From: Ostrea edulis
Lineage: Eukaryota
DNA: 64,000 nt
Assembly: GCF_947568905.1 (NCBI RefSeq)
Contig: NC_079172.1
Span: 35,712,001 to 35,776,000, forward strand
Direction of reading: 5' to 3'
Shown: positions 991 through 61,746 of the stretch, in pieces
How the letters are laid out: each line of letters opens with the position of its first letter
Position numbering within the stretch: the stretch's first letter is position 1
The notes under the pieces: model-generated
Databases searched by the model: none
What the model saw: only the letters and a program-made list of their open reading frames with translations
Told to the model about the DNA's origin: nothing
Program-made: the position numbers and the translations under genes

Positions 991-1925
991 TCAATCAATT
1001 GTCCACCCAGAGAACGTTGTGTACCCATCAGAGTTGCTATCTATATTCCCACTGTTACCAGAGGGACCTGTCCGGACGTAGACCGCCGCGCCTTCATCCA
1101 CGTACACCACTGATGTACCAGTGCTTGAATCCGAGTAGCTGGCGTCACGTGTGTAAATTGAACCGTAAATAATTCCATTGACCAGTAGCTGCGTGTTAAA
1201 GTATGATCCTCCATGAGTTCGTATAGTCCACGTAAAGACGTAGAGTCCGGAACGCGGGGCCATGAAGACACCCATGTGATGGTTATAACCGCTTCCCTCA
1301 TTGGTGAAAATAGCGTCAAATATCAAGGTTCGTAAATGTCCAGGCGTCAAACTGGTGGACATGAACGCAGAGAAAGCGATGGTTCCATTGGTGGAGCGAA
1401 TTCCTACAAATTTCGTAAACAATTGGTAAAAGACGTATACGGAAATCAATGATGAAGAAGTATTGACTTGCGTTTGTAATTTTATTTGATACCATATATA
1501 TAGTAATATTAACAAAATGTTTATTTACCCTGTCGCCTGTGCCTCTGTACATTCTTTGGAGTATTTCCTTCTCGGAAAATTAAATCATGAGAACTACTTT
1601 TATTTCCCTGCCCTGTCGGATACTTCTTAAATACAGCATATCGTTCCATTGAATCCAGACGTCCTTCACATTCAAGAAGGCGGTGTTCGCTTAGCTTTCT
1701 TTGATGTGTCTCAGATTCCAGTCTGGTGGACAGATCTGCGAGGGCGCCCTTTAAGTCCCCATTGTCCCTCTGTAGTTTCTCTACAATGGATTCTAGTTTT
1801 TCCACGGTTTTAGATAATTTGAGGACCATTCCAGCAATATCTGGTTCCTCCATCCTGTCGCTGTCGCCCTGTACTTTGGTGAAGCATGTTAGGATTAGCA
1901 GATACACTAGGAGTCGTAGCGCCAT
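991..1925 (-). CDS. C1q-domain-containing protein, copy A (signal peptide + coiled coil + gC1q), 269 aa, join(1529..1925,991..1403)
   Basis: ATG at 1925 ([20 protein letters not shown]). Phase-1 GT-AG intron 1404..1528. Exon 2 has gC1q motifs [43 protein letters not shown] and TGA at 991. Confidence 0.92.
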
Positions 1926-2059
1926 CTTGTGAATAATGAGGATCTCTGAAGTAAGATCGGACAATATATTGCATTAATTTTTGCTTATCAGCACAGGAGT
2001 GATTCCTTTGTTCTATAAAAGCAATCAATTCTTGGAAAATTGTCTTATAATATCAAATG

Positions 2060-2072
2060 ACCTATATATCGC
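2060..2072 (-). promoter_or_regulatory. Putative TATA box of C1qDC copy A (TATATAGG), also conserved upstream of copies B (~9464) and E (~22481)
   Basis: gacctatatat is conserved ~140 nt upstream of the ATG in the three intact copies; TSS not known. Confidence 0.45.
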
Positions 2073-2316
2073 AGATTACAGACCATTTAGCAAGGTCGCG
2101 TACCGAAGTTTCCAAATATCAATTCTGAGGACTCCGTGTGAATGAAAGTTTTGCGCCCCCGGATTGTTTCCTGCAGTATTTCTGTATGGAATTGGAAAAA
2201 AGGTAAAATTCAAATTTGGTGCAATTATTTATATATTTGCCGCCAATCAGTACACTGATATTTAGGTATTTTTATGATGTTATATTTTATTGTTTTTTGG
2301 TTTTTTTTCTTTGTTT

Positions 2317-2349
<33 letters not shown>

Positions 2350-2740
2350 TATCTCCTGCATGTGAAGACTCCGTTGACATTTTACACAGTAAAGACTTTT
2401 ACTTCCATTTCCGTAGAAAAGGGGTTTATGTATCTAGTCCAGGGGCTAAGTATGGTGGCTGATTTGTGCCATTTTACATTTGTTGTCATTTCGTCCCGAA
2501 ATCGGTTTTACGAGTAAACATTTAAGTCTGTTTGACGAGTCCAGGTTTTTTTTTTTATCTGATTCCATTATGAATTTCAAATTAGGAAGTGCTCAGAGTG
2601 TATAGAATAGTAAAAAATTCCATTAGTTGACCTCCACATTTGTCCCATTGATAAAACAGTCGTTTAAATGACATTTCCATGTTTTCCTCGGAAAAGTTTC
2701 AAAGTTTTGTCCGAATTTTCTGTCCACAACACAAAACAAT

Positions 2741-3612
2741 TTTTATGCCCCCCTTCAAAGAAGAGGGGCATATTGGTTTGCACCTGTCAGTAGGTCGGTA
2801 GACTACATGTTGTCCGCTCAATATCTTGAGAACCATTCACTTGATGATAATGATATATCATATTTGGGTTAGTTATGAGTAGAAGAGGACCCCTATTGTT
2901 TTTCAGGTCAAAAGGTCAAGGGTCAATCTACTCTGGAGATAGGAATATAATGTCTGCTCAATATCTTGAGAACCCTTTGCTTGAAAGACATCAAATTTGG
3001 CACACTGGTACATCCTAAGGATGATTTTGAGGTCATATGGTCAAAGGTCAAGGGTCAAACTGGACATAGGAATATACTGCCCGTTCAATATTTTGAGAAC
3101 CCTTTGCTTGACAGACATCAAACTTGGTACACTGGTACGTCTTCAGGAGAAGATGACCCCAAATGATTTTGAGGTAACATGGTCAAATGTTAAGGGTTAA
3201 ACTGGATATTAGAATATACTGTCCGCTCAATATCTTGAGAACCCTTTGCTTGACAGACATCAAACTTGGTACACTGGTACATCTTCAGGAGAAGATGACT
3301 CCTATTGATTTTGAGATCACATGGTCAAAGGTCAAGGGTCAAACTTGACATGGGAATATACTGTCTGCTCAGTATCTTGAGAACCCTTTTCTTGAAAGAC
3401 ATCAAACTTGGTACACTGATATGCCTTCAGGAGAAGATGACCTCTATTGATTTTGAGGTCACGTGGTCATAGGTCAATGGTCAAACTGGACATAGGAATA
3501 TACTGTCTGCTCAGTATCTTAAGAACCCTTTTCTTGACAGACATCAAACTTGGTTCTCTGGTACATCTTCAGTAGAAGATGACCCCTATTGATTTTGAGG
3601 TCACATGGTCAT
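2741..3612 (+). mobile_element. Non-autonomous Helentron-like (HINE) element with ~142-bp internal tandem repeats, right end deleted
   Basis: Starts in a T-run with ttttatgccccccttcaaagaagaggggcat; about 6 units of aatatcttgagaaccctttgcttgacagacatcaaacttggtac..ggtcaaaggtcaagg; absent from the paralogous unit at ~10255. Confidence 0.7.
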
Positions 3613-4711
3613 GCAAATATTAACACACACACACACACAAATCTGCATGGAGAACAGGGTGTATTTGATAATAATGAATATGGAAATATGATTACTTGGG
3701 AAAGCAGAAACAAAACTGGGAACAGAAATAATGTTTAGTTTATCTGATTTGATACATTAAGATATCAGTATTATTGATTTAAAGATATCATACATTTAAT
3801 TACTTGTATAATGTCATATCACTGATCATAGTAATAGTTTATTATTATTTCTATACGGGATTTGTGAATTCCATTGAAATAAATACACTGTTCAAAGTTA
3901 CATATACATATATTATCAAAAATACACCGGAAATACCCAAGGTATTGAACATTCAAGCTTTTGAGATCACCACTTGTGAGATACTAATATACATGTATAT
4001 ATGTATTAGTAGGTTATATTAGTATCTCACAAGTGGTAATCTCTAAAGCTTGCAGAAGGTTGAAACTGACTATTCAGAATGACTTACAGGGTTTTATCCA
4101 GCATTTAGATGTTACTACCCATTTTATATTTAAGGGGAATTTTTGAGAAATCCAGTCATGAGCTTCCAGGGGGTGGGGATGAGGGACATCCATGGAATAT
4201 AATATATACAGATTATAACAGCCATATAAATTGATTAATTACTCATTGTATCTATATTGTAAGTCTGACAATTATAGAAAATGACTTAGAATATCAAAAA
4301 AATGATTTTTGTTGAAAATTGTTATACAATTTTGTGAAGTTTCTACAAATGATGGGAATTTTTTATCTGTGGAAGGGGAAATATCCATTTGTTGCCAAAG
4401 GGGAAAGGTACCTTTTACCGGTAGTAAAAACAACCTAGATAAATCTCTGACTTATGAGAATGATCGGTGGGGAAATAACATATTTAGATAAATTATTGGT
4501 TCTGTATAAAAATAATTATGAGTCATTCTAGAAAAAAAAAAGGGGGGGGGGGTATGTTCATAAGATCTATACAAGCTACCCACACTTCATGTGCCTGTGA
4601 CAATTACCTATGCAGTAGACACAATCCTCGCATATCAGGGGCACACCATAGACACTCCCCATTTAATTTTATAAGTGACGAATCAGTCTACCCATCTATT
4701 CTATAAATTCA

Positions 4712-5040
4712 AAAATATAGGGGTAGTCCTATACTGAACTTATACCCCTTACTGTACAAGTATATAGGGGTAGTCCTATACCGAACGTATACCCCTAATG
4801 TACAAGTATATAGGGGTAGTCCTATACCGAACTTATACCCCTTACTGTACAAGTATATAGGGGTAGTCCTATATTGAACTTATACCCCTTACTGTACAAG
4901 TATATAGGGGTAGTCCTAAACCGAACTTATACCCCTTACTGTACAAGTATATAGGGGTAGTCCTATACCGAACTTATGCCCCCTTACTGTGCAAGTATAT
5001 AGGGGTAGTCCTATACCGAACTTATACCCCTTACTGTACA
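4712..5040. repeat. ~47-bp minisatellite, ~7 copies
   Basis: Unit gtatataggggtagtcctataccgaacttataccccttactgtacaa. Confidence 0.9.
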
Positions 5041-5305
5041 GATAAGACACATTATATAACTTATACACCTCCCCCTGTACAAATAAGACACATTGTAGAA
5101 CATATACCCCCTCCTTTCTCTCAGACAGGATACATTATACATGTACAACTTAAACCCTTCTCAACCACTAACAGGTGATATTTCAACTGGGTCCTTCTGG
5201 CTTGACGTCGGTCTGGGCCATGGGGCTTGTAAATACAACTCTACAAAGTATTCACGCCAAAATACTGTGCATTGTTCTGATTTTTGTGTGAATATATATA
5301 TACAT

Positions 5306-5367
<62 letters not shown>

Positions 5368-5689
5368 CAAGGCCTATAGAAAGGGTGTGTTTATGGTAAC
5401 CCTACCGACCCTATATTTTTGTCCCGACCCTAAAAAACGTTATCGGAAAATATATTACCGGTTATTTTCCGGAAATTCCATCTTTTTCCGGGACCAAAAC
5501 GGCTCTTGCACTACTTTTATAACAATGGCAACTTTCGCCATTGGGGGTTCAGTGAAAACGGCGAGTGTTTTGCCTCTCACCTTCATAAAATGTGCCCACC
5601 TGAAAGAGTCAATACGTGTTATATTCCAAAATTCCACGACATTTATAGATATTTTCAATATCATCACTTCAATTTAAAGAACCCGTGGG

Positions 5690-6349
5690 GTTCAGGGCTA
5701 GAATACGTCAGGGCCTCTATACTCCTTGCTTGTCGTAAGAGGTGACTAAATGGGGCAGTCCTTCGGATGAGACCGCAAAAACTGAGGCCCTGTGTCACAG
5801 CAGGTGTGGCACGATACAATTTAATCAAATCTTCTCTAACTGTTACACCGGAGAAGGATCTGACAACATAGCATTTGATGTCATCTTATCGACCCCAATC
5901 TTATGAATAATTCAATAAATATTCGACCAATAAGAAAGAATCAAAGACCAATCAGGAATCGTTTTACTCAAGCGTAATCTATTCAGATTGTAAGTTCATA
6001 CAAAATGGCGTCGATCCATGAATAGTTTAAACGAATTCCAAATATCAGCGTTAAAGGAAGAGCAAACTTTAAGGAAGATCTTAGATAGTTTTCATTCATT
6101 ACCGTTAAAATAAGTTTTCTGTGGCTTTCTAAAAGCGCCCATGGCTACCTCCATTTTCATTCATGTTAGTGAAAGCCGTCATTTCATTGGTCAAATGTGA
6201 AAGGTGAAATAACATGACCTCGAACACAATACTGTCATATCCTTCTCCGGTGTAACGGCCAGATAAGATCTGATCTTAACTGACTGCTAAAAGGCCGTAA
6301 GCACCGAGCATTAGTAGGCCTACGATTTGCAGCCTTTGAACACCTGCAT

Positions 6350-6381
<32 letters not shown>

Positions 6382-6410
6382 AGGTGATACGTTAAATGTA
6401 ACAAACAAAC
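5690..6410 (+). mobile_element. Bivalve SINE body split by a MITE; the 3' half recurs at ~11779-11930
   Basis: cttgtcgtaagaggtgactaaatgggg..gtgtcacagcaggtgtggcacgata, then ctaaaaggccgtaag..gtgacgtctccatatgagtgaaaaattctc..gacgttaaa; same family as 23100-23441. Confidence 0.7.
5817..6275. mobile_element. Mutator-like MITE (~43-bp inverted arms, 9-bp TSD inferred from a paralog)
   Basis: Arms 5823-5865 and 6233-6275. Left junction is ggcacgata|caattt; the paralogous right junction at 11773-11787 is aaattg|ggcacaata. Confidence 0.65.
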
Positions 6411-8389
6411 CAACTAAAGAACAATAAATGTAAAGTTGTGGGGAAATTGCACGATTTAACTCCATCCCATCCTCGGAAACCCACGGCTGATTACGCTTCA
6501 TTCCTCTGTCCATCACCCATAGGTCCATACTACTCGCTCGTTCTCGTGAATAAATATTGTCCAATCAAAGTAATCGTTATAGTTACGGAACTCTTCTGTT
6601 TTTAAAGGTAACATTAACATACCTTTGCTATCACAACAATTGTATACCAATTGTACTGAAAGTGTCCAGTAAACTGATTGGACAAATTCGCTCGGGGTAT
6701 ACTATGAGCGCCTAATCAAATTGTCTCATTAATTATTCTTGAGAACGAGCGAGTAGGAATGAATGGACCCACGGGTGATGGAGAGAGGAACGAAAGCTAA
6801 TCAACCGTGGGTTTCCGACGATAACTCCATCCTAGCAGTTGGTGAAGTTGTTGAAAACTGTTGAGATATGCGCGAAGTTGTTGAAAACTGCTATGCAACA
6901 AGAACACAAATAACAATACACTAAATAGCAAAACAAAAAATCCAACCTACCGACCCTACATTTTATCAATAGGTTACCGTAAACACTCATATATCTCTGG
7001 CCTTAACAGAAAAACCAGCATGTGTCTGTGAACTTTTAGGAGAACCCTCATATTTCAGTGTGGAAGTTCTTTAGTTGGTAAAAATGTTGAATTTCTGTGA
7101 TCTTGTCGTGTTTAGATAACTTTAGGTGAAGGTCATGTTACTAAATACATAATCATTCTTGCAGTCTTTGTTGAAAAGATATGGTGTGGACGGAAACTTT
7201 ACACTAAATCTCGGTGCCCCTGATATTGACCCCACTTGACTTTGAGGCATACGGGTTTAATTGTTACACGAAAATGCCATGAGCAGCCTTTGAATTGACT
7301 CGAGAGGTTCTCTGCAATAAAAATGTGGCGTGGACATGTTAATGCATCTGAGAAAACAAGATCCCACTTTACATGTCATTATCACATATTCCTAGGCAGA
7401 ATGGTGGACAATGGAGTGTCAAATTAATATAAAATCAAATAATTAGATTATTTCGCTCTTTATGCTCTCATCAATTGAATTGATGCGCCCATCTTCTCAA
7501 TTAGTACCCGCAATAATTGATTTGATGTTCGCATAAATTCAATAGATGCGCGCATCAAATCAATTATTGGTCTCATCAATTCAATTGATGCACGCATCAA
7601 TGTGGTAGAATTAATCCTCTAGAATATTAATTTATAGCTAGATATGAATTATTTGATGATGTCTTTAATTCAACTGAAGATATCTTTATTCATTTACAAC
7701 GATATTGTATATAAGTAATTAATGTACGTATTAGGTCTTTCAAACAGAGCGGTAATTCAATTTAAGAGATCAATAATTCAATTGTGGATATGTCGAATTG
7801 AAGATATAGTTGATCTTTCTAAAATAATGTTTGCGTGCAATCCATTTAATGGACAATATGATTAATTAGATTAAAGAGAGAATTAATTGAATTGATGCGC
7901 GCTATAATCCATTAAAAGAGCAATAATTGAATTGTTGTTCTCTTCAATTGAATTGTAGTGCGCATCAATTCACTTCTTGATATCATTAATTTATTTTTAC
8001 CACAGCGGCACAATTCAGTTATTGTGCGTATAATGCGTGCAATAATTCAGAATTGAAGATATAATAGAGATCTTCAATTGAATTGTTCCGCGTATTAAAT
8101 GAATTAATGCTATCTTCAAATGATTAAAGGTATCTTTAATTATTTAAGTTTATTTTAATTGGGCGCTCCACAGACACGGTAATTCCATAGTATCCTACCC
8201 TTCTCTCGTTGGCGGTAGTTATACATGAAGGGGAGATGGGGATACATTCAACCCTAACAAGGATTTTCGCTCATTGATTACTGTGTAATGTAGATTCCTG
8301 GTATAGTGGAAGCATCTTATAATCACGCTACAACAGCGAATCTTCTCAGTTTTAATGAAATCTACTATAATTTACATTAATGATAACAT

Positions 8390-9328
8390 TCAATCAATTG
8401 TCCACCCAGAGAATGTTGTGTACCCATCAGAGCTGCTAACTATACTCCCACTGTTACCAGAGGGACCTGTCCGGATGTAGACCGCCGCGCCTTCAGCCAC
8501 GTACACCACTGATGCACCCGTGCTCGAATCCGAGTAGCTGGGATCGCGTGTGTAAATTGACCCGTAAATAATTCCATTAACCAGTAGCTGCGTGTTCAAG
8601 ACTGCTCCTCCATTACCTCGTATTGTCCACGTGAAGACGTAGAGACCAGAACGCGGGGCCATGAAGACACCCATATGATGGTTATAACCGCTTCCCTCAT
8701 TGGTGAAAATAGCGTCAAATATCAAGGTTCGTAAATGTCCAGGCGTCAAACCGGTGGACATGAACGCAGAGAAAGCTATGGTTCCATGGGTGGAGCGAAT
8801 TCCTAGAAATTTCGTAAACAAATGGTAAAAGACGGATGCGGAAATCTGTAATGAATAAGTGATGACTTGCGTTTGTAATTTTATTTGATACCATAATATA
8901 TATATTATATAGTAATATTAACAAAATGTTTATTTACCCTGTCGTCTGCGCCTCTGTACATTCTTTGGAGTATTTCCTTCTCGGAAAATTAAATCACCAG
9001 TGCGACTTTTATTTCCCTGCCCTGTCGGATACTTCTTAAAAACAGCATGTTGTTTCACTGAATCCAGGCGTCCTTCACATTCAAGAAGGCGGTGTTCGAT
9101 TAGCTTTCTTTGGTGTGTCTCAGCTTCCAGTCTGGTGGACAGATCTGCGAGGGCGCCCTTTAAGTCCACATTGTCACTCTGTAGTTTCTCTACAATGGAT
9201 TCCAGTTTTTCCACGGTTTTAGATAATTCAAGGACCATTCCAGCAATTTCCGGTTCCTCCATCCTGTCCCCCTTTACTTTGGTGAAGCATGTTAAGATTA
9301 GCAGATACACTAGGAGACGTAGCGCCAT
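8390..9328 (-). CDS. C1q-domain-containing protein, copy B, 267 aa, join(8938..9328,8390..8802)
   Basis: Paralog of copy A with the same exon structure; phase-1 GT-AG intron 8803..8937; both exons open. Confidence 0.92.
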
Positions 9329-10831
9329 CTTGTGAATAATGAAGATCTCTGAAGTAAGATCGGACAATATATTGCATTAGTTTTTGCTTATCAGCATAGG
9401 AGTGATTCCTTTGTTCTATAAACGCAATCAATTCTTGGAAAATTGTCTTATAATATCAAATGACCTATATATCGCAGATTACTGACCAATTAGCAAGGTC
9501 GCGTACCAAAATATCAATTCTGAGGATTTCATGTGAATAGAACTTTTGCGCCCCCGGATTGTTTCCTGCAGTGTTTTTGTATGGAATTGGAAAAAGAGTA
9601 AAATTCGAATTTGGTGCAATTATTTATATACTTGACGACGTTGATTCCATCAGTACACTGTTATTTAGGTATTTTTGTGTTATTGTTGTTTTGTGTTGTT
9701 GTTGTTTTTTTCATTGTAATTATTATTATTTTTTTTTTTTTTTTTTTTTTTTTTACATATCTCCTTCATATGAAGACTTCATTGACATTTTCACGGTAAA
9801 GACTTTACTATCGTTTTCGTAGAAGAAGTGTTTATGTACATGTTTCGTTTATTTCATTTGTTGATTGTGGGAGGTTCCTTGTTAATGATAAAATAGGTTC
9901 TGGGCTCTGGGCTGCGGTCAAGATCATAGCGGGTAGTCTAGGGGTTTAGTATGGTGGCTGACTGTGCCATTTTACATTTGTTGTCATTTCGTCCCGAAAA
10001 TTCGCTAAATATAGGTTTTACGAGTACATATAAATATATAAGTCTGTGTGACGAACGTCCAGGATTTCTATCAGATTCCATTATGAATTTCAAATTACTA
10101 AGTGCTCCGAGTGTATATAATAGAGAAAAATTCCATTAACTGATTCCTACATTTGTCCCATATGATAAAACAGTCGTCTAAATGACATTTCCGTGTCTTC
10201 CTCGAAAAAGTTTCAAAGTTTGTTCGAATTTTCCCTGCACAACACAAAACAACTTTTTTCCAATTGTCCTAAATACAAATTACACGCTCGAAAATTAATT
10301 CGTAATCTTCTCACCAAATTACCATGGTAAATTCAGGACACTGAATTAAATATTTTTTTCATAATTGGAAAACGTATGTCATGGCAACAAGATACATGTA
10401 TTATCATGGGCGTATTATCTCCTATACACGGCATATTGCGACTTATATCTCATTTGTGCACAGGAAATACTTTTTGGAAAAGGTTCATTGTAGTCTTTCG
10501 TTGAATCATGACTACTGGTTCAATATCTGGTATTTTCTGTGTCACAATATAGGTTTTATAATATACCCTGTGTTACACAATTATACCAAAGCAAGATTAG
10601 ATTCGATAAAAAGATAAAGAATGGATATTTTCAAAATGTATATACATATTTACCTGTGTACCTTGTGTCCTTGTACAAGAGTACTTAGTCTTCCTCCTTA
10701 TTTTTCTCCCCGAAAACCTGGCTATATAGCTCCACACCACCCCTTGAAAACCTGGTTAAGTAGAATCACCCCCCCCCCCCCCCCCCAACTGGCTAAAATA
10801 TCAAATTGTCTCCCATTTCATATGCAAATAT

Positions 10832-10874
<43 letters not shown>

Positions 10875-13423
10875 TCTTGAAAACAGGGTGTATTTGATAA
10901 TAATGAATATGGAAGATATGATTACTTGGGAAAGCAGAAACAAAACTGGGAACAGAAATAATGTTTAGTTTATCTGATTTGATACATTAAGATATCAGTA
11001 TTATTGATATAAAGATGTCATACATTTAATTACTTGTTTAGTGTATGATGTTATATCACTGCTCATAATAATAGTCTATAATAATTGGTGCTATGACATT
11101 TAACTCATAATAACAGTCTATAATGATCGGTGCTATGACATTTAACGGTTTCTATGCGAGATTTGTGTATTCCATTGAAATGGAAACACTAAAGTTACAC
11201 ATTTTATCAAAAATACACCGGAAATACCCAAAGTATTGAACATTAAAAAATACAGGAGGGGGGCACGGGAAGTCCTGTGCAGCACCTTTTGTTACATACC
11301 GTGGTATTTATGAAGCAATCAGTTACAAATACTACAACACCTGAAGTGTGGATAGCGTGTATAGATCTTCTGTACATACACCCCTTCTAGAATGATTCGA
11401 AATTATTTTTTTTTACAGAACCAATACTTATCCAAGACTTGTTATTTCGCCTACCGATCATCCTCATAAGTCGTTCTGAATAGTCAGTTTCTACCTTCTG
11501 TAAGCTTTTGAGATCACCACTTGTGAGATACTAATAATGTATCAGCGTTAAAGGAAGAGCAAAGGAAAATCTTAGATATTGTACATCCATTACCGTTAAA
11601 ATATGTTTTCTGTGGCTTTTTAAAATCGCCCGTAGCTACTGCCATCTTCTTTCATGTTAGTGAAAGCAATCATTTCATTGGTCTAGTGTGAAAGGTGAAA
11701 TAACATGACCTCAAACACAACCCTGTCATATCGTTCTCCGGTGTAACGGTCAGAGAAGATCTAATTTTACCTAAATTGGGCACAATAAAGATCCCTCCCT
11801 GCTCAAAGGCCGTAAGCACCGAGCATTATGAGGCCTAAGATTTGGAGCCCTTGAATACCGGCAATGGTGACATCTCCATATGAGTGAAAAATTCTCGGGT
11901 GAGACGTTAAACGTAACAAACAAATCAACTAAAGAACAATAAATATAACGTTGTGGGGGAAATTGCACGAGATAACTCCATCCTAGCAGTTGGTGAAGTT
12001 GTGGAAAACTGATATGCAAGAAGAACACAAATGATAATAAATACACTAAATAACAAACAAAAAAAGTGCGTCCTACCAACCCTACATTTTTTCAGTAGCT
12101 TACCGTAAACACACATATATTTTTGGCCTCAACAAAAAAACAGCATGTGTCCATGAAAATTTATGAGAACGTACCTCATATTTCATTATGGAAGTTCTTT
12201 AGCTGCACTCTACGAAATATTAGTTGGTAAAACATTGAATTTCTGTGACCTTGTCCTATTTAGATGACTTTAGGTGAAGGTCATGGTACTAAATTCATAA
12301 TAATTCATGCAGTCCATGTTGAAAAGACATGGCTTGGACAGAAACTTTACACTACGTTTTCTGCGATAAAAATGTGTTGTGGAAAATGGAGCGCCAAATT
12401 AACATAAACTCAAATAATTTAATTATTTCGCACATTATTTAATTGATGCGCGCATTAAATCAATTATTCCGCGCATCATTGTGGTAGAAATAATGCTCTA
12501 GAATATTAATTTATAGTTAGATATGAATTATTTGATGATATCTTTAATCTAACTGAAGATATCGTTAATCATTTACAACGATATTTTATAAGTAATTAAT
12601 GCATGCATCGATTCTTTCAAAGAGAGCAGTAACTCAATTTAAGACAACAATAATTCAATTGTGGATATGCTGAATAAAAGATATCTCTAATTAGATAGTT
12701 TCTCTCTCTAAAAGAATGATTGTGTACATCCATTTATATGACGATATTATCAACTCAATTGAAGAGAACAGTAATTGAATTGATGCGCGTTATAATCCAT
12801 TAAGAGAACAATATCATTCAATTTCTCTGCACATTGATTGAATTGATGCGCGCAATAAATGAATCATTGCTCTCTTCAATCGAATCGTTGCGTACATCAA
12901 TTAAATTGTTGTTCTCTTCAGTTGAATAGTAGCGCGCATCAATTCACTTCTTGATATCATTAATTTATTTGAAGAGCACCACAATTCAATTATTGCGCGC
13001 ATCAATTTAGCAAAATAATTCATGCTATCAATAATTCAATTAATGCGCACAATAATTCAGAATTAACCATTAATCATTCAAAGAGATCTTTAATGGAATT
13101 GTTGACCGCATTAAATGAAATGACACTATATTCAAATAATTAAAGGTATCTTCAATCATTTGAATTTATATTAATTTGACGCTACATAGTGGACACGGTA
13201 CTATCAGAGTAACACCCTTCTCTCATTGGCTGTAGGTATACATGATGGGAGGGGGGGGGGGTTACATTCAATCTCGACATTGATTTTTCGCTCATTAATT
13301 ACTGTATAACGTAGATTTCTGATGTACAACCTGCAGTGGAAACACCTTACAATTACACTACAACTGAGACGTTTCACGGTTTTAATGAAAGCATACTATA
13401 ATTACATTAGTTAATTACAACAT

Positions 13424-14335
13424 TTAATCAATTGTCCACCCCGAGAATGTTGTGTATCCATCATAGCTGCTGATTATACTCCCACTGTTACCAGTGGGAC
13501 CTGTCCGGACGTAGACCGCCGCGCCTTCAGCCACGTACACCACTGCCGTACCTGAGTTCGAATTCGCGTAGTAGTAATCATGTGTGTAGATTGAACCGTG
13601 TATAATTCCATTGACCAGTAGTTGTGTGTTGAAGTATGATCCTCCATTAGCTCGTATTGTCCAGGTGAAGACGAAGAGACCAGAGCGCGGAGCAGTGAAG
13701 ACGCCCATGTGGTGGTTGTAACCGCTTCCCTCATTGGTGAAAATAGCGTCAAATATCAAGGTTCGTAAATGGCCGGGGGACAAATTGGTGGACATGAACG
13801 CGGAGAAAGCGATGGTGCCATTGGTGGAGCGAATTCCTGCAAATTTCGTAAACAAGTGGTGAAATCAGTAACGCATAAGTGATGACTTGCGTTTGTAATT
13901 TTAATTGATACTATATATAGTAATGCTAACAAAATGTTTATTTACCCTGTCGCCTGTGCCTCTGTACATTCTTTGGAGTATTTCCTTCTCGGAAAATTAA
14001 ATCATGAGAACTACTTTTATTTCCCTGTCCTGTCGGATACTTCTTAAAAACAGCATGTCGTTCCACTGAATCCAGACGTCCTTCACATTCAAGAAGGCGG
14101 TGTTCGATTAGCTTTCTTTGATGTGTCTCAGCTTCCAGTCTGGTGGACAGATCTGCGATGGCGCCCTTTAAGTCCCCATTGTCCCTCTGTAGTTTCTCTA
14201 CAATGGATTCCAGTTTTCCCACGGTTTATATAATTCAAGGACCATTCCAGCAATTTCCGGTTCCTCCATCCTGTCCCCCTTTACTTTGGTGAAGCATGTT
14301 AAGATTAGCAGATACACTAGGAGACGTAGCGCCAT
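13424..14335 (-). pseudogene. C1qDC copy C, frameshifted in exon 1 (exons 13946..14335, 13424..13836)
   Basis: Exon 1 is 390 nt versus 391 nt in copies B and E. A 1-nt loss near 14225-14228 gives ...ELYKPWENWNPL*. Exon 2 is intact. A retroelement interrupts the upstream TATA-like motif. Confidence 0.8.
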
Positions 14336-14477
14336 CTTGTGAATAATGAGGATCTCTGAAGTAAGATCGGACAATATATCGCATTAGTTCTCTCTTATCA
14401 GCACAGAAGTTATTCCTGTGCTCTATAAATGCAATCGATTCTTGGGAAATTGTCTTATACTATCAAATAACCTAAAT

Positions 14478-17303
14478 GAAAGGTGAAGATAACAAACGGT
14501 GATCAATCTCATAACTCGTATAATATAAAACTTATACGGTACCAATTTGGATGCACCAGATGCGCATTTCGACAAATAATGTCTCTTCATTGATGCTCAA
14601 CCGAAATGTTTGAAATCCGAAATAACATTGAAGAGCAATAGAAAATAGTAGTTGGACAAACACGGACCCCTGAGCACTCCAAAGGTGGGATCAGGTGCCC
14701 AGGAGGAGTAAGCGTCCCCTGTTGACAGGTCACACTCACCATAAGCCCCACATCCCGATCAGGCAAACGGAGTAATCCGTAGCCAAAATCAGTGCGCCAA
14801 GAACAGTCCAACAATCGGCATGAAACACGCTAGACAGCACCTGACCCGAAGACTATGTCGCTACAACGACCAGAGAACTTGCATAATGTTGACTTTAAAC
14901 GAGACTGTTGAAACCCCTGTACTTTCAACTTGTTTGCATGCCTCGATTTAAAAACTTACCATATGCAGAACAAGTTCTTGCGTGTTGAATGAGTTGAGAG
15001 ATATAAACACCATATGCAGGTGATAATGGAATATTACTACAGTTGACGGTGGAGAAATTAAAATAATCCCGCTTGTCATAAAGTTGAGTTGTTAGTTTGC
15101 CGTTTATAATTATCTACTTTCAATAAAATATCTAAGTATGAAACAGAAGTGGATGACTCTCCAGTGTCAGTGTCTTTTACTTTGAGCGCACAGGGATATA
15201 ACGAATTGACATATAAATGACAGTTATTATTGTTGATAGATAAAACGTCAGCGATATATTTAATTGTTGAATTGAAGGCCACAGCAAGAGATATTTTACT
15301 TCTCACGTAGAAGTTTTTGAATAAATTTTGCTTCATAGAAGTATAAAAACAGGTCAGCTAACAAAGGAGCACAATTCGTTCCCATGGGATTTCCAACAGA
15401 GTGTTGGAAGACCTGATCACCAAAGACCACAGAGATATTGTCAATGAGGAACTCTTATCATGTTTTTTTTAAAATTTCAACTTCAGAGTACTTGTGCATG
15501 GAATCAGAGTGGTGTTTAACAAAGTAATTTTTTGGATGACTGATCACAAGATATGAATATTTCCGTTTCCCCTTTTCTTTAAAAGAAGCAACTGTCTATG
15601 ATATCAAGAAGTCTAGTCTTTAATATATCGTGAGGAATGGTCGTGTAAAGTGTTGAAAAGTCATAGGTTCTGATGTTGTTGATTTGAGAAAAGTTTTGCG
15701 ATTTCAAGTTTACTAAAACTTCTTAAGAAATTTTTAGAATCCACATTTGATTTACACCACTTCTGGAATATATAGTCGCACAGTAAATTTGAAGTTTCTC
15801 CTTCACAGCTGATGATATTTTCGTGAGGAGCAAAGATAGCACTTACTGGATCCTGAAATGTATCTTTCTTTATAAGGGTATTTATGTAGTTTAGGAATCC
15901 AGTATAGGTACGGTAACTCATGTTCATCCGACCCATTGACTGGGATATTAAATGTGTCTAAAACTGAAGCCTGGTTTTGAAGAATTTCATCTTTTGAAAG
16001 GGCAGCTGGAGTATAAGTACGATTACCAAAAGTGGAATCAATGCCAAGTTCGTTTAAAACACAATTGTGATAATGAGCCTTACAAACGAAGACAATGTTG
16101 TTACAAGCTTGGTCAGCTGGAACCAAAACATATTCCTCATGCAACCCATGATCTACATTGTAATTCTTTTATCACTTCTGGTTTACTAAACACAGAAGGA
16201 TAGATGGTACTCACTTTTGTTTTAATATGTATAATGCGGGATTTTGATATTCCTCGTATACTTTTAATCCATTCTGACAATGTATCAAGTTCTTCTTTTT
16301 CATATTTAGTCCATCGTCTGGCATAATCTTCGATAGAATTCATAATAGAGATGAAGTTCTGTCGCCATTGAAAGACCGAGGTTCTCTGTACTTAGGACCT
16401 TTTAAAATAAGTGATTTGAAGTCCTCATTTTCAGCTCTATCAACATCACCAGTAATGACATGTCCAGCTGGACTATAGTTGAAAGAAGATGAAGAACAAT
16501 TAGAACACGTAAGTGGATTAAGTATAAGATGGTCTATATCTAGGCAGTGTAAAGTTTGTTTATATTTTAAAAGTTTGGATGCAACAGTAGAAGTATATTT
16601 GTCGGAAATACTAGGTGTAGACTTTTTTTATGACAAAGAATGTTGCTTATCATATGTTGACGACATCTATTCCTTTGTATGTAAATTTTATCTCAAGCAA
16701 CTGGCTGCATGATTTGGAAGGAATATCATTCATGATCCGTGGTGGTTTAAAGAGCCTGTGATTGGCAACATCCATTATCACGTAAAACTCTCAACAGAAC
16801 AGAGTAAAGTTTTGTGCGAATATGATGTGGACTTCATTGTCTGTTGATGTAATGTTAAAAGTGAATCAAACGTGACATCATTTATACTTGGTCTTTTATA
16901 TGAACGATATCCATGATTGCGTTTCCGTCTTTGAGCATTGGAAAAGAGTCCCAACACATTCACGTTATTTCCTTGTGGACTAGTCAAATTTCCCACATCA
17001 TACACATTATCATTGCATCCATATGGAAATGCAATACCTAGGGTTCTGATCCAGTGATCTTCTCGTTGTTTACGAAAATAGGTACTTAATGTTGGATTGT
17101 TTGTGTGATGGTAATTTTTTTCCAAAATCCTTACCTTCATGGACAAGATGGAGTGGTCCGGTGAATTGAAATGTTTGTAAAGAAGTTGGTTACCACCATT
17201 ATTTATTTGAAATTTGTGCCCCGATGTTCTTTGATTAACTGAATCCTTAGTTTCCCCCACATTAATTACGTCACATAGGTTACACTCAATAGCGTAGACA
17301 ACG
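14478..17303 (-). mobile_element. Degenerate 5'-truncated Penelope-like retroelement with N-terminal GIY-YIG followed by RT (Naiad/Chlamys-type domain order)
   Basis: VVYAIECNLC..VGETK..QR..GH..R..E..WIRTL...PYG.N at ~16950-17300; LVPAD..NNIVFVCK and LPYLYWIPKLHK at ~15860-16140; YDFSTLYTTIPH (~15640); PMGTNCAPLLADLFLY (~15360); KYIADVL (mutated YIDD, ~15250); several stops and frameshifts. Confidence 0.85.
14554..14595 (-). ncRNA. Minimal type-I hammerhead ribozyme fold with the core C3 mutated to A
   Basis: Minus strand CAUCA-AUGAAGA-GACAuuauuUGUC-GAAA-UGCGCA-UC-UGGUG: stem I CAUCA/UGGUG, stem II GACA/UGUC, palindromic stem III UGCGCA, AUC cleavage triplet. Confidence 0.75.
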
Positions 17304-17567
17304 ATCGCAGATTACTGACCATTTAGCAAGGTCGCGTACCGAAATATCAATTCTAGGGACATAGTGTGAATAAAACTTCAGCACCCCCAGGTTGTTTCCG
17401 CAAAGTGTACGTGTGCCGTAACTTTACGGGGCTTAAAGACTTCGTGAATAAAGTCACTGTTGTGTCTCTGTATAAGATTTTTTTAAAAAAGGTCAAATTC
17501 GAATTGGGTGCAATTTTTGATGTACTTGAAGTTGTTTACTTAAGTACCTATACACTGGTATTTAGGG

Positions 17568-17610
<43 letters not shown>

Positions 17611-17985
17611 TATCTCCTGCATGTGACTGATGTAATTCTTACTACATCTCATGCAGGTAATTATATAAAGGAAAACTCACGTCATTGACATTTTCACACT
17701 AAACGGCTATGTTGGTAAACAATGAATTTCTGTGACCTTGTGTTTAGATGACTAGGTGAAGTCATGTTACTAAATTCATAATCACTCTTGGATTCAATGT
17801 TGAAAGATATGGCTGGTAAAGAAACTTTACACTAGCTCTCAGTGTCCCTGATCTTGTCCTGATTGACTTTGAGGCATAAGAGGTTAATTGGTACGCGAAA
17901 ATGCCATGCGCAACGTTTGAATTAAATGTGAGTCTAGAGGTTTTCTGCAATAAACATCCATGGGGTGTGGACATGTTTATACATG

Positions 17986-18148
17986 CGAGGTGAAGATAGC
18001 GAACAGTGATCAATCTCATAACTCCTATAAGCAATACAAATAAATAGTTGGGCAAACACGGACCCCTGGACACACCAGAGGTAGGATCAGGTGCCTAGGA
18101 TGATTAAGCATCCCGTGTTGACCGGTTACACCCGCCGTGAATCCTATA
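17986..18148 (-). mobile_element. Short 5'-truncated copy of the Penelope-like 3' terminus; related termini at 14-50 and 37338-37680
   Basis: Shares gtgaagata(a/g)cgaacagtgatcaatctcataactc..aaacacggacccctg..ggatcaggtgcc with 14478-14760. The empty site atgcatctgagaaaa is visible in the paralogous unit at ~7343. Confidence 0.75.
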
Positions 18149-19184
18149 TCTGAGAAAATAAGGTACCCACTCTACATGTCATTATTACATAATTTAATCT
18201 AGGCAGAATGGTGGACTATAATGCACGAATTTAACATAAACTCAATTAATCTAATAATTGCGCATATAATTCAATTGATGCGCGCATCAAATCAATTATT
18301 GATATCATCAATTGAATGGATGCGCACATCAACTCAATTAATACCCGCAATAACATGATTTGATGCGCGCATCAATGTGGTAGAAATTTTGCCCTAGAAT
18401 ATTAATTTAGAGCTAGGTATGAATCATTTGATGATGTCTTTAATTTAACTGAAGATATCGTTAATCATTTACAACAATATTGTATATGTAATTAATGCGC
18501 GCATGAATTCTTTCAAAGATCGAGAGCAATAATTCAATTGTGGATATGTTGAATTGAAGATATCTCTAATTAGATAGTTGCTCTCTCTAAAAGAATGATT
18601 GTGTGCATCCATTTAATTGACAATATCATTAATTCAATATTGAAGAGAGCAATAATTCAATTATTGTGCGCGTTAATTGAATTGATGCGCTCTATGTACA
18701 ATCCGCTATAAATGCAATAATTGAATTTATTATATAGCTGATAATTAGTCTATTATAAAATCTGTGTAAAATCTAGAGAATGTTAGCGTTCAATATCCGT
18801 ATAATTTATTGAACGCTAACTTTGCAGTGTGTAAATTGTATGCGCCCGAAACATTCCAAGTATGAGCGTTCAATATTGACGTTACCGTAACGACGTAAAC
18901 AAACCAAAGTGGCAAACGACGGTCCTCCGAATCTGACAGATCCGGTATTTGATATATACTTAAGCAAAATGTTTTACTGTACATAAATTATGATGTCCCC
19001 ATTCACAAAATCAGTTTGTTTCATGCATTAATGACGGGTTAAATATTGAACAGTTAAGAAATGCATGCTGATATTGCACACCTTCACCTTAGATGCCAAT
19101 ATTGACGAATACTCGTCTATTTTGGAGTATTTTGAGTGAAAAGGGGTATAATTTAACAACTAAATATTTTGACTATATGATAAA

Positions 19185-19318
19185 AGGGTTATTGAACTTA
19201 TATAGGTGAATATTGGCACTCGTTGGCTGTCAAAATGCACTCGCAAGCTCGTGCATTTTGACAGCCAACTCGTGCCAATATTCACCAATATAAGTTCAAT
19301 AAGTTCAATAATAACCCT
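19185..19318. repeat. Near-perfect ~52-bp-arm palindrome with 10-nt loop
   Basis: ttattgaacttatataggtgaatattggcactcgttggctgtcaaaatgcac / gtgcattttgacagccaactcgtgccaatattcaccaatataagttcaataa. Confidence 0.9.
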
Positions 19319-19779
19319 ATATTATTGCGCGCATTGATTGAATTGATGCGCGCAGTGAATGAATCATTGCTCTCTTTCATTGAATCGTAGCGTGTATCAA
19401 TCTAATTGTTGTTCTCTCCAATACGCAACTTCCGAGATAACAGCTCTTCTGTGATGGAGGTACGTTCAGTGTTCTATTGAAGGCTTCGGTGGGTACAAGA
19501 TGTATACATGTACATGTATTATAGACTAGCTGTGTAAATACGGATAAAAGTAATGAAAGTGTAAATTTCGTTTATATTAGCCATTGGTATACATTAAATT
19601 GACCATATCGAAAATAGTATTTGTTTGAATTGGGCCATTAAATCAAATATTAAATTATTGTTTATTTCCTCTTCTGCAGGGGTGATATATCTTTTTAGGA
19701 AATCTTATAGCCATATTTTGTAATATATTCTTTTTTAAAGTAAAGGCTGGTTTGTCGCATGAACTCGTAATGTTTAAAT

Positions 19780-19915
19780 TGTTTTATTTTATTTGGATGT
19801 TATATTTTATGCTCTGATTAATCTTATCATGTTTTACATTAATTTGTTAAAGCGCTTAGAGTAATTACAAATTATATAATGCGCTATATAAATGCCGCAC
19901 ATTATTATTATTATT
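19780..19915 (+). mobile_element. Possible L2/CR1-type 3' end
   Basis: aaagcgcttagag..atgcgctatataaatgc followed by an (att)n tail, resembling L2-clade 3' termini. Confidence 0.45.
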
Positions 19916-20459
19916 ATATTTAATCAAAGAAAGATAGTGATAATCGATTTTTGTTTGAGCTATTGTATTATTGAATACTAATAAAATGAATACTGTGTGT
20001 CCCTGCAGTTTGGGTGGTAGCATGGTGTCTGATAATCGGCCTTTAAGCAATAAATGAAGGCAGCTATAAGCATTTGTACCCATCGCGTGTGGACGAGAGT
20101 ATGTTTGCGTCGATCTCACTGTGCGTAAGAGTTCCACAAAGGGAAAGAACTACATGTATTGGGCAACTCGGAAATTGCGTATTGAATTGTAGCGAGCATC
20201 AATTCACTTCTTGATATCATTAATTTATATGACGACAATCAGTTATTGCGTGCATCAGGGCAGTTAATGCTTTCAATAATTCAATAAATGCGCGCAATAA
20301 ATCAGAATTCAAGACATCATTAATTATTCGAAGAGATCTTTAATTGAATTGTTGAGCGCATTAAATGACTTAATGTTATTTTCAAATAATTAAAGGTATC
20401 TTCAATTATTTGAATACCAGTTTAACATCCCCTTCTTTCGTTGGCGATAGGTATACATG

Positions 20460-20512
<53 letters not shown>

Positions 20513-20654
20513 CTCTACATTGATTTTTTTCGCTGATTAATTACTGTTTTGTATACTCCCGATGTACCACCCGCGGTGAAAGCATGTTGTTAAGCTTATA
20601 GTCACACTAGAATTGCAATGTTTCACGGTTTTAATGAAGGCATACTACAATTAT

Positions 20655-20797
20655 TTAATCAATTGTCCACCCCGAGAATGTTGTGTATCCATCAGAGCTG
20701 CTAACTATACTCCCACTGTTACCAGAGGGACCTGTCCGGATGTAGACTGCCGCGCCTTCAGCTACGTACACCACTGATGTACCCGAGTTCGAATGCG
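20655..20797 (-). pseudogene. C1qDC copy D remnant (3' end of exon 2 only)
   Basis: Encodes ..[46 protein letters not shown]. Homology ends at ~20794-20800, where the sequence switches to the AT-rich 3' flank seen at 12785 onward. Confidence 0.88.
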
Positions 20798-21432
20798 CGT
20801 TATAATCCATTAAAAGAACAATATTATTCAATTTCTCTGCCCATTGATTGAATTGATGCACGCAATAAATGAATCATTGCTCTCTTCAATCGAATCGTTG
20901 CGTACATCAATTAAATTGTTGTTCTCTTCAGTTGAATAGTAACGCGCATCAATTCACTTCTTGATATCATTAATTTATTTGAAGAGCACCACAATTCAAT
21001 TATTGCCGCATCAATTTAGCAAAATAATTCATGCTATCAATAATTCAATTAATGCGCACAATAATTCAGAATTAACCATTAATCATTCAAAGAGATCTTT
21101 ATTGGAATTGTTGACCGCATTAAATGAAATGACACTATATTCAAATAATTAAAGGTATCTTCAATCATTTGAATTTATATTAATTTGGCGCTACATAGTG
21201 GACACGGTACTATCAGAGTAACCCCCTTCTCTCATTGGCAGTAGGTATACATGATGGGAAGGGGGAGGGGGTACATTCAATCTCAACATTGATTTTTCGC
21301 TCATTAATTACTGTATAACGTAGATTTCTGATGTACAACCTGCAGTGGAAACACCTTACAATTACACTACAACTGAGACGTTTCACGGTTTTAATGAAAG
21401 CATACTATAATTACATTAGTTAATTACAACAT

Positions 21433-22343
21433 TTAATCAATTGTCCACCCCGAGAATGTTGTGTATCCATCATAGCTGCTAACTATACTCCCACTGTTCC
21501 CAGTGGGACCTGTCCGGACGTAGACCGCCGCGCCTTCAGCCACGTACACCACTGATGTACCCGAACTTGATGACGAATAGTGATAGCGTGTGTAAATCGA
21601 GCCGTATATAAGTCCATTCACCACTAGCTGCGTGTTGAAGTACGTTGAACTTGTCGACCCTCGTATTGTCCACGTGAAGACGTAGAGTCCAGAGCGGGGA
21701 GCCGTGAATATGCCCATGTGATGGTTATAACCGCTTCCCTCATTGGTGAAAATAGCATCAAATACCAAGGTTCGTAAATGGCCGGGGGACAAACCGGTGG
21801 ACATGAACGCAGAAAAAGCGATGGTGCCATTGGTGGAGCGAATTCCTACAAATTTCGTATACAAGTGGTGAAATCAGTAACGCATATTTTAACATTTCAA
21901 TTGATACTACATGTATACATGTATATGGTTATACTAACAAAATGTGTATTACCCTGTCGTCTGCGCCTCTGTACATTCTTTGGAGTATTTCTTTTTCGAA
22001 AAATTAAATCATGAGAACTACTTTTATTTCCCTGTCCTGTCGGAAACTTATCAAAAACAGCATGTCGTTCCACTGAATCCAGACGTCCTTCACATTCAAG
22101 AAGGCGGTGTTCGATTAGCTTTCTTTGATGTGTCTCAGCTTCCAGTCTGGTGGACAGATCTGCGAGGGCGCCCTTTAAGTCCCCATTGTCCCTCTGTAGT
22201 TTCTCTACAATGGATTCCAGTTTTTCCACGGTTTTAGATAATTTGAGGACCATTCCAGCAATTTCCGGTTCCTCCATCTTGTCCCCCTTTACTTTGGTGA
22301 AGCATGTTAAGATTAGCAGATACACTAGGAGACGTAGCGCCAT
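21433..22343 (-). CDS. C1q-domain-containing protein, copy E, 267 aa, join(21953..22343,21433..21845)
   Basis: ATG at 22343; phase-1 GT-AG intron 21846..21952; both exons open; gC1q motifs intact. Confidence 0.92.
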
Positions 22344-61650: not shown

Positions 61651-61746
61651 CCTTGATACGATCGAAATGTAATTGAAAATACCCCGGATGTAAACATCTA
61701 AATATATATTCCACGTGGTATTGTTTACAACTACGAGCACGTGTTT

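What the first reader, a model, noticed from the sequence alone, without database searches (positions are those of the whole stretch)
991..22343. C1qDC tandem array with divergence focused in two Tyr/Ser/Gly-rich segments (paratope-like repertoire)
Seen: exon 1 and most of the gC1q scaffold are nearly the same in all copies, but two segments differ. Segment 1: RTHGGSYF / RGNGGAVL / RANGGSYF / RGSTSSTYF. Segment 2: [11 protein letters not shown] / [11 protein letters not shown] / [11 protein letters not shown] / [10 protein letters not shown]. Copy E has +1 aa in segment 1 and -1 aa in segment 2, so exon 2 is 413 nt in all four copies. Established: bivalves have large C1qDC expansions acting as pattern-recognition proteins, and Tyr/Ser enrichment is typical of antibody binding sites. 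Inference: these are exposed ligand-binding loops of a locally diversifying recognition family.
Basis: partly seen in the sequence, partly recalled or inferred. Interest (0 to 1): 0.7.

Follow-up and report, generated by a model that had tools for sequence, protein, structure and literature searches.

The report
Oyster C1q gene array, variable apex loops
Four neighbouring flat-oyster genes for secreted C1q-type recognition proteins differ mainly in two loops at the tip of the protein head, a pattern already published for another oyster, and here there is no clear proof of adaptive diversification.

Summary
Confirmed. This Ostrea edulis window carries four minus-strand, two-exon genes for secreted coiled-coil + gC1q proteins. 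Three are intact. The fourth has a 1-nt frameshift and a 2.8-kb insertion 142 bp upstream. There is also a 3' fragment. Exon 2 is 413 nt in all four.

Of 137 head positions, 35 vary, and they cluster (8 of 8 in segment 1, permutation p=0.0007). They lie in the C-D and E-F loops, which by topology and homology sit at the trimer apex. Both segments are Tyr/Ser/Gly-rich (50-72% against about 30%).

Against the interpretation:
- dN/dS in the segments is 0.4-0.64 (scaffold 0.16-0.20), not above 1.
- Their replacement rate equals the scaffold's silent rate, and their silent divergence is raised too.
- The B and C loops are identical in contigs from three other oysters each.
- Exon 1's sameness is concerted evolution: dS is 0.04-0.12, yet exon 1 is only 31-43% identical to that of other oysters.
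- Copies C and E are about 98% identical except in a 200-nt block holding both loops, a gene-conversion mosaic.

The same picture was published for Crassostrea virginica (Gerdol 2019). This is an ordinary member of a known kind, and 'paratope-like repertoire' overstates it.

The parts
991..1925 (-). Gene A (RefSeq LOC125657621, 269 aa): exon 1 1529-1925, intron 1404-1528, exon 2 991-1403. Intact.
1198..1221 (-). A segment 1 (RTHGGSYF; end of strand C, C-D loop, start of strand D)
1117..1149 (-). A segment 2 ([11 protein letters not shown]; end of strand E, E-F loop, start of strand F)
8390..9328 (-). Gene B (LOC125668289, 267 aa): exon 1 8938-9328, exon 2 8390-8802. Intact. Segment 1 at 8597-8620, segment 2 at 8516-8548.
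13424..14335 (-). Copy C (RefSeq 'caprin-2-like, partial'): exon 1 13946-14335 is 390 nt, with a 1-nt deletion in an A-run near 14228 that shifts the frame. Exon 2 13424-13836 is open. Segment 1 at 13631-13654, segment 2 at 13550-13582. Probable pseudogene.
14478..17303 (.). 2.8-kb insertion 142 bp upstream of C's ATG. Homology to the upstream flank of A resumes at 17304.
20182..20800 (-). Fragment D: 3' flank plus the last ~45 codons and stop of a fifth copy (coding remnant 20655-20792).
21433..22343 (-). Gene E (LOC125657620, 267 aa): exon 1 21953-22343, exon 2 21433-21845. Intact. Segment 1 at 21637-21663 (9 codons), segment 2 at 21559-21588 (10 codons).
13534..13730 (-). Block of C that stays about 24% diverged from E (47 mismatches in 200 columns), while the rest of the 1.7-kb C/E unit is about 98% identical apart from the far 5' flank and the 5' half of the intron. 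The block holds both segments and the 16 codons between them.

Best explanation
This is a lineage-specific tandem array of secreted 'sC1q-like type II' genes of the flat oyster. Each gene has a signal peptide and coiled-coil stalk in exon 1 and the whole gC1q head in exon 2. The array grew by unequal crossing-over of a 5-8 kb unit and has since been partly homogenised by gene conversion. Exon 1 and the 3' end of exon 2 with its flank are kept alike. The central part of exon 2, which encodes the C-D and E-F apex loops, has kept or gained divergence. The beta-strand scaffold is under purifying selection (omega about 0.2). The two loops evolve on average at about the neutral rate (omega 0.4-0.64). 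Some paralogue pairs show bursts of replacement changes, and other pairs conserve the loops. The likely consequence, which is inferred and not shown, is that the three intact heads present different Tyr/Ser-rich apex surfaces, and different acidic residues at the position of the apex Ca2+ site of C1q and C1QL. They would then differ in what microbial or other ligands they bind, as proposed for oyster C1qDC proteins generally. Copy C is probably dead.
For: Shown: gene models, the C1q Pfam match and the species name. The head folds as a C1q jelly roll: pLDDT 93, Foldseek TM 0.85-0.88 to Caprin-2, CTRP5 and C1q heads. A long helix spans residues 27-96 before the head. Only these four copies and the fragment are more than 45% identical in the 895-Mb genome, and the whole spacer is duplicated. 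Variable sites are clustered. Omega: segments 0.64 against scaffold 0.20 in the four copies; 0.40 against 0.16 in 15 family members. Replacement excess in some pairs: B-C 14 N to 2 S, and a C. virginica pair 13 to 1. Exon 1: dS is 0.035-0.12, with 1 AB|CE site against 15 in the exon 2 scaffold. Yet exon 1 is only 31-43% identical to other oysters' exon 1, while exon 2 is 72-79% identical. The C-E mosaic is shown. The same loops are the entropy hot spots in other arrays of this genome. Published precedent: Gerdol et al. 2019, PMC6835236.
Against: No RNA run holds the locus, so expression is unshown. No ligand data exist. Only a monomer was modelled, so the exposure of the loops in a trimer is inferred from topology and homology. 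Positive selection is not significant for this array. The alignment inside Ser/Tyr-rich loops with indels (copy E) is uncertain and inflates both dN and dS. A single tree was assumed although the locus is a mosaic.
Confidence: 0.6

Rival explanations
1. Relaxed constraint only. The C-D and E-F loops are tolerant surface loops made of slippage-prone Ser/Tyr/Asn codons. They drift and take indels at the neutral rate, and the differences between copies have no functional meaning.
For: pN in the segments (0.183) equals pS of the scaffold (0.164, p=0.45), and pooled pN/pS is 0.57. Omega is not different from 1. The same loops vary in every C1q family, as stated for human C1q in PMC3342031 and seen. 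Indels occur there across the family.
Against: The loops are not free. Between close pairs (L032-L034, L038-L040) there are no replacements in the segments. A and B keep segment 2 with one replacement despite 4 silent changes. The Tyr/Ser/Gly-rich composition is conserved across oysters. Some pairs show N to S of 13:1 and 14:2.
Confidence: 0.3
2. One reading: a paratope-like repertoire under pervasive diversifying selection, with the loops acting as hypervariable binding sites.
For: Apex position of both segments. Tyr/Ser/Gly enrichment. Clustering of replacements. Episodic positive selection reported for C. virginica clusters.
Against: Mean omega is below 1. Only three intact genes are present. 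The B and C loops are identical in contigs of three other individuals from different studies. Segment 2 is conserved between A and B.
Confidence: 0.15
3. Patch import. C and E (and perhaps A and B) are very recent duplicates. The diverged 200-nt block was written into one of them by gene conversion from a paralogue that is absent from this assembly, for example a presence/absence haplotype.
For: C and E are about 98% identical outside the block and 24% diverged inside it, including silent sites between the loops (6 of 12 silent sites).
Against: No other place in the 895-Mb assembly matches E's block better than copies A to C do. Inside the block C and E are each about as far from A and B as from each other, which fits retained old divergence equally well.
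Confidence: 0.15
4. The proteins are not immune lectins but have another C1q-family role, such as shell matrix, cell adhesion or a cerebellin-like function.
For: The best solved-structure matches by sequence are cerebellin-1 and C1QL, and RefSeq calls one copy 'caprin-2-like'. A C1qDC protein with a role in shell formation is reported in a pearl oyster (title of PMC7806589).
Against: These matches are at family level (23-29% identity). The architecture is the commonest oyster C1qDC type, for which pattern-recognition roles are the ones documented.
Confidence: 0.1

Closest known systems
Tandem sC1q-like type II C1qDC clusters of Crassostrea virginica (Gerdol, Greco and Pallavicini 2019, PMC6835236)
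   Same: Secreted coiled-coil + gC1q proteins. Two exons with conserved splice sites and near-constant exon sizes. Tandem copies. Most head sites are under purifying selection, and a few hypervariable, gap-rich sites lie in the C-terminal half of the domain.
   Different: A different species, and a small array of 3 intact genes. Positive selection is not significant here. This analysis also shows that exon 1 is homogenised by gene conversion and that silent divergence is raised around the loops. The passages of that paper that I read do not describe either point.
Human C1q globular head (PDB 1PK6) and C1QL1-3 heads
   Same: 10-strand jelly roll, TM 0.85-0.90. Segment 2 aligns with the loop that carries the apex Ca2+ ligands. 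Strands are conserved and loops variable.
   Different: The stalk is a coiled coil, not collagen. Identity is 20-28%. Copy E lacks the acidic residues of that loop. No heterotrimer or Ca2+ binding is shown.
Cerebellin-1 and Caprin-2 C1q domains
   Same: Best sequence match (5KCA, E 8e-27 over three domains) and best fold match (4OUM, TM 0.85).
   Different: These are vertebrate synaptic or intracellular proteins with other partners. The similarity is at family level only.

Membership tests
C1q domain (Pfam PF00386; C1q/TNF superfamily) | Sequence match to the family profile above the curated threshold | tested here: met
   All four exon 2 products score 63.7-67.8 bits against a cut-off of 23.7.
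C1q domain (Pfam PF00386; C1q/TNF superfamily) | Ten-strand jelly-roll beta sandwich | tested here: met
   AlphaFold model with pLDDT 93.4. Foldseek probability 1.00 and TM 0.80-0.88 to solved C1q-family heads.
C1q domain (Pfam PF00386; C1q/TNF superfamily) | Assembly into trimers through the head | not testable with these tools
   Only monomers could be modelled.
Bivalve sC1q-like type II (classification used in PMC6835236) | N-terminal signal peptide | tested here: inconclusive
   A hydrophobic N-terminus ([15 protein letters not shown]..) is seen by eye and modelled as helix 2-20. No signal-peptide predictor was available.
Bivalve sC1q-like type II (classification used in PMC6835236) | Coiled-coil region, not collagen, before a single C-terminal gC1q | tested here: met
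   One long helix at residues 27-96, with pLDDT up to 90. No Gly-X-Y repeats in the translation. A weak tropomyosin-like match. A single C1q domain. No dedicated coiled-coil predictor was run.
Positively selected C1qDC paralogue cluster (as reported for C. virginica) | Tandem paralogues of one architecture | tested here: met
Positively selected C1qDC paralogue cluster (as reported for C. virginica) | Statistical evidence of omega above 1 at some sites or branches | tested here: inconclusive
   Segment omega is 0.64 (lnL -218.08, against -218.84 with omega fixed at 1) and 0.40 family-wide. Pooled pN/pS is 0.57. Single pairs show 14:2 and 13:1. No site or branch-site model was available.
Antibody-like hypervariable binding site (the 'paratope' analogy) | Tyr/Ser/Gly-rich exposed loops | tested here: met
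   50-72% against 27-31%. The loop position comes from the model. Exposure in the trimer is inferred.
Antibody-like hypervariable binding site (the 'paratope' analogy) | High variability between individuals or a large repertoire | tested here: not met
   Contigs of three other individuals each cover B 8485-8705 and C 13516-13748 with no difference. Only three intact genes are present. Contigs can hide rare variants.

The most novel reading that the evidence does not exclude
Gene conversion keeps the coiled-coil stalk (exon 1) and the subunit scaffold of the paralogues interchangeable, while the block that encodes the apex loops is kept different. The products of neighbouring genes could then co-assemble into mixed trimers, as human C1q A, B and C do. 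Three genes would give up to ten different apex surfaces. A conserved basic motif (R-x-R-R-Q, or K-R in other oysters) just before the head could also let a convertase release the heads.
Probability: 0.12. Interest if true: 0.6.

Novelty: new member of a known kind. Interest (0 to 1): 0.3.

Why it matters
Bivalves have hundreds of C1q-domain genes and no antibodies. How these genes gain different specificities is an open question in invertebrate immunity, and it matters for disease resistance in the declining European flat oyster. This array adds a clean small example. Its useful point is a caution: raised amino-acid divergence in the apex loops comes together with raised silent divergence and clear gene-conversion tracts. 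Selection tests on such arrays therefore need recombination-aware methods before anyone claims diversifying selection.

Tried and rejected
- Full-length AlphaFold model from 22 sequences: mean pLDDT 55 and the head poorly folded. It was replaced by a head-only model from 40 sequences.
- Ancestral-state reconstruction to polarise changes: the machine does not offer it, so no ancestral sequences were made. Only pairwise and partitioned codon-model estimates were used.
- Search for a donor of E's divergent block in the whole genome: only the four copies match.
- RNA evidence: no RNA run holds the locus. No paper mentions the three LOC identifiers.
- A structural variant suggested by a contig joint 8527->12783: rejected as cross-mapping of the fragment D / copy E junction at 20786-20793.
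- Pfam on the ORFs of the 2.8-kb insertion: no hits. Rfam at gathering threshold on 1-24000: no hits.
- One homologue (P0010) had no contig on record.
- The spliced coding sequences were not joined. Exons were analysed separately by reference. The only full-length proteins used were the database's own entries, P0001 to P0004.
Full report
**What is there**

The window is G000:C9:35712001-35776000 of an 895-Mb assembly. Database names identify the species as Ostrea edulis. Four genes lie head to tail on the minus strand. Each has two exons joined by a GT..AG intron of 107-135 nt in phase 1.

| Copy | Exon 1 | Exon 2 |
|---|---|---|
| A | 1529-1925 | 991-1403 |
| B | 8938-9328 | 8390-8802 |
| C | 13946-14335 | 13424-13836 |
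| E | 21953-22343 | 21433-21845 |

- Exon 2 is 413 nt in all four copies.
- Exon 2 alone encodes a complete C1q domain (PF00386, E 1e-17 to 1e-18).
- Exon 1 encodes a hydrophobic N-terminus and a long helix, residues 27-96 of the RefSeq protein, with pLDDT up to 90.
- There are no collagen repeats.
- This architecture is the 'sC1q-like type II' class of Gerdol et al. 2019 (PMC6835236).
- RefSeq lists A, B and E as uncharacterised proteins of 269, 267 and 267 aa, and C as 'caprin-2-like, partial'.

Copy C is probably a pseudogene.
- It has a 1-nt deletion in an A-run near 14228 that breaks the frame.
- It has a 2.8-kb insertion (14478-17303) 142 bp upstream of its ATG.
- I could not confirm the deletion independently. 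Contigs of other oysters show no indel there, but their coverage of that exact place is uncertain.

A fifth, partial copy (fragment D, 20182-20800) keeps the 3' flank and the last ~45 codons.

The duplicated unit includes the spacers. The genome holds at least 148 C1q matches, but only these copies are more than 45% identical to one another.

- Of 137 aligned head positions, 35 vary.
- All 8 columns of segment 1 vary (permutation p=0.0007).
- 19 of the variable sites lie in one 35-column window that covers both segments (p=0.0005).
- A weaker third patch lies in the G-H loop.
- Tyr+Ser+Gly make up 50-72% of the segments against 27-31% of the rest.
- That bias is conserved in homologues from other oysters at 47-59%, with one C. 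virginica copy at 28%.

**Where the segments sit**

A head-only AlphaFold model built from 40 sequences has pLDDT 93.4. It matches solved C1q-family heads with TM 0.80-0.88.

Its strands are 52-62, 67-74, 77-85, 91-101, 106-111 and 129-135.
- Segment 1 (residues 61-68) is the C-D hairpin.
- Segment 2 (residues 85-95) is the E-F loop with its strand ends.

In gC1q heads both termini emerge at the base, and a Ca2+ ion sits at the top (PMC3342031). Counting antiparallel strands back from the C-terminus puts the G-H, E-F and C-D loops at the apex.

In the HMMER alignments, segment 2 pairs with the loop of the C1q A chain and of C1QL2 that I recall as carrying the apex or axis Ca2+ ligands (the residue identities are from memory). 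The apex position is therefore well supported. Exposure in a trimer and contact with a ligand are inferred. Different C1q-family proteins use different surfaces (PMC12048575).

**Selection**

Nei-Gojobori counts between the four copies:

| Region | dN/dS | dS |
|---|---|---|
| Scaffold | 0.15-0.27 | 0.11-0.36 |
| Segments | 0.24-0.73 (B-C 2.5; C-E not computable, pS saturated) | 0.18 to above 2 |

For a wider test I added eleven homologues with DNA from other oysters. I then fitted Goldman-Yang models on a fixed tree.

| Data set | Omega, segments | Omega, scaffold |
|---|---|---|
| 15 family members | 0.40 | 0.16 |
| Four O. edulis copies | 0.64 | 0.20 |

For the four copies, omega in the segments is not distinguishable from 1 (lnL -218.08 against -218.84). 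Tree length is 3.27 substitutions per codon in the segments against 0.56 in the scaffold.

Pooled over seven phylogenetically independent pairs:
- Segments: pN 0.183 and pS 0.320. The ratio is 0.57, below 1 at p=0.019.
- Scaffold: pN 0.044 and pS 0.164.
- The replacement rate in the segments equals the scaffold's silent rate (p=0.45).
- The silent rate in the segments is twice the scaffold's (p=0.0009).

The picture differs between pairs.
- B-C (14 N to 2 S) and a C. virginica pair (13 to 1) show replacement excess.
- Two close pairs show no replacements in the segments.
- A and B keep segment 2 with one replacement beside four silent changes.
- In segment 1, A-B differ by 7 replacements and no silent change. 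This is suggestive, but the segment was chosen after looking at the data.

Episodic adaptive change is possible but not shown.

**Mosaic history**

Exon 1 is alike because it has been homogenised, not because it is constrained.
- Its dS is 0.035-0.12 with omega 0.4-1.1.
- It has only one site that supports the AB|CE split, against 15 such sites in the exon 2 scaffold.
- It is only 31-43% identical in protein to exon 1 of the nearest homologues in other oysters, whose exon 2 is 72-79% identical.

Copies C and E are about 98% identical over 1.7 kb, including 195 identical bases across the stop codon and 3' flank. The exceptions are the far 5' flank, the 5' half of the intron, and a 200-nt block (13534-13730). 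That block holds both segments and the 16 codons between them. It has 47 mismatches, and between the segments 6 of 12 silent sites differ.

Raised silent divergence in and around the loops is what gene conversion around an older, unconverted patch would give. Import of a patch from an unsampled donor would give it too. Replacement-driven selection alone would not. No donor exists in this assembly. Alignment uncertainty in E's Ser-rich loops adds to the effect.

**Population level**

No RNA run holds the locus. Twenty DNA runs from eight studies do. Contigs from three other individuals each cover B 8485-8705 and C 13516-13748 without a single difference. The paralogue-specific loops of B and C are therefore fixed rather than hypervariable between individuals, within the limits of contig data.

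**Comparison with what is known**

Gerdol et al. 2019 described the same picture in Crassostrea virginica:
- 476 C1qDC genes, 55% of them type II.
- Tandem duplication, and two-exon genes with near-constant exon sizes.
- Purifying selection on most head sites.
- Episodic positive selection on 4-11 sites per cluster, more frequent in the gap-rich C-terminal part.

The flat-oyster genome papers note that the family is over-represented in this species. In this genome the same loops are the entropy hot spots in other arrays and across 24 paralogues.

This array is therefore a new member of a known kind. What this analysis adds is the homogenised exon 1, the raised silent divergence around the loops, and the finding that only three of the five copies are intact.

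**Limits**

- The spliced models were not joined. Exons were analysed by reference, and the full-length proteins used were database entries.
- No ancestral sequences were made, because the machine does not offer them.
- A single tree was assumed for a locus that is a mosaic.

Noticed in passing
window 14478-17303 (ORFs on the minus strand at 15661-17260): A 2.8-kb insertion specific to the C-E spacer, 142 bp upstream of copy C. Its ORFs have no Pfam match.
   Followed up: partly
window 1529-1545, 8938-8954, 21953-21969 (last codons of exon 1): A basic motif directly before the head: VQRHRRQ or VQRRRRQ here, and K-R in C. virginica and C. gigas homologues. It may be a proprotein-convertase site that releases the globular head. 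The abstract of PMC12913486 reports furin cleavage of CTRP12. Untested.
   Followed up: no
window 3022-3611 and 4715-5040: Two tandem repeats in the A-B spacer: a 142-bp unit x 4.2 copies (88% matches) and a 47-bp unit x 6.9 copies (93%).
   Followed up: no
window 10977-13165: Parts of the B-C spacer are very high-copy repeats. Summed contig depths there are 10^3 to 10^6 times those of the genes in all four runs.
   Followed up: no
window 61741-63198 (+): A single open frame of 485 aa with leucine-rich repeats, a fibronectin type III domain and a hydrophobic C-terminus. It looks like an LRR-FN3 membrane protein gene.
   Followed up: partly
L035 and L039 (C. virginica, about 44 kb apart on one chromosome): The two C. 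virginica homologues differ in the same two segments by 13 replacements and 1 silent change, against 10 and 13 in the scaffold. This is the strongest selection-like signal in the family set.
   Followed up: partly
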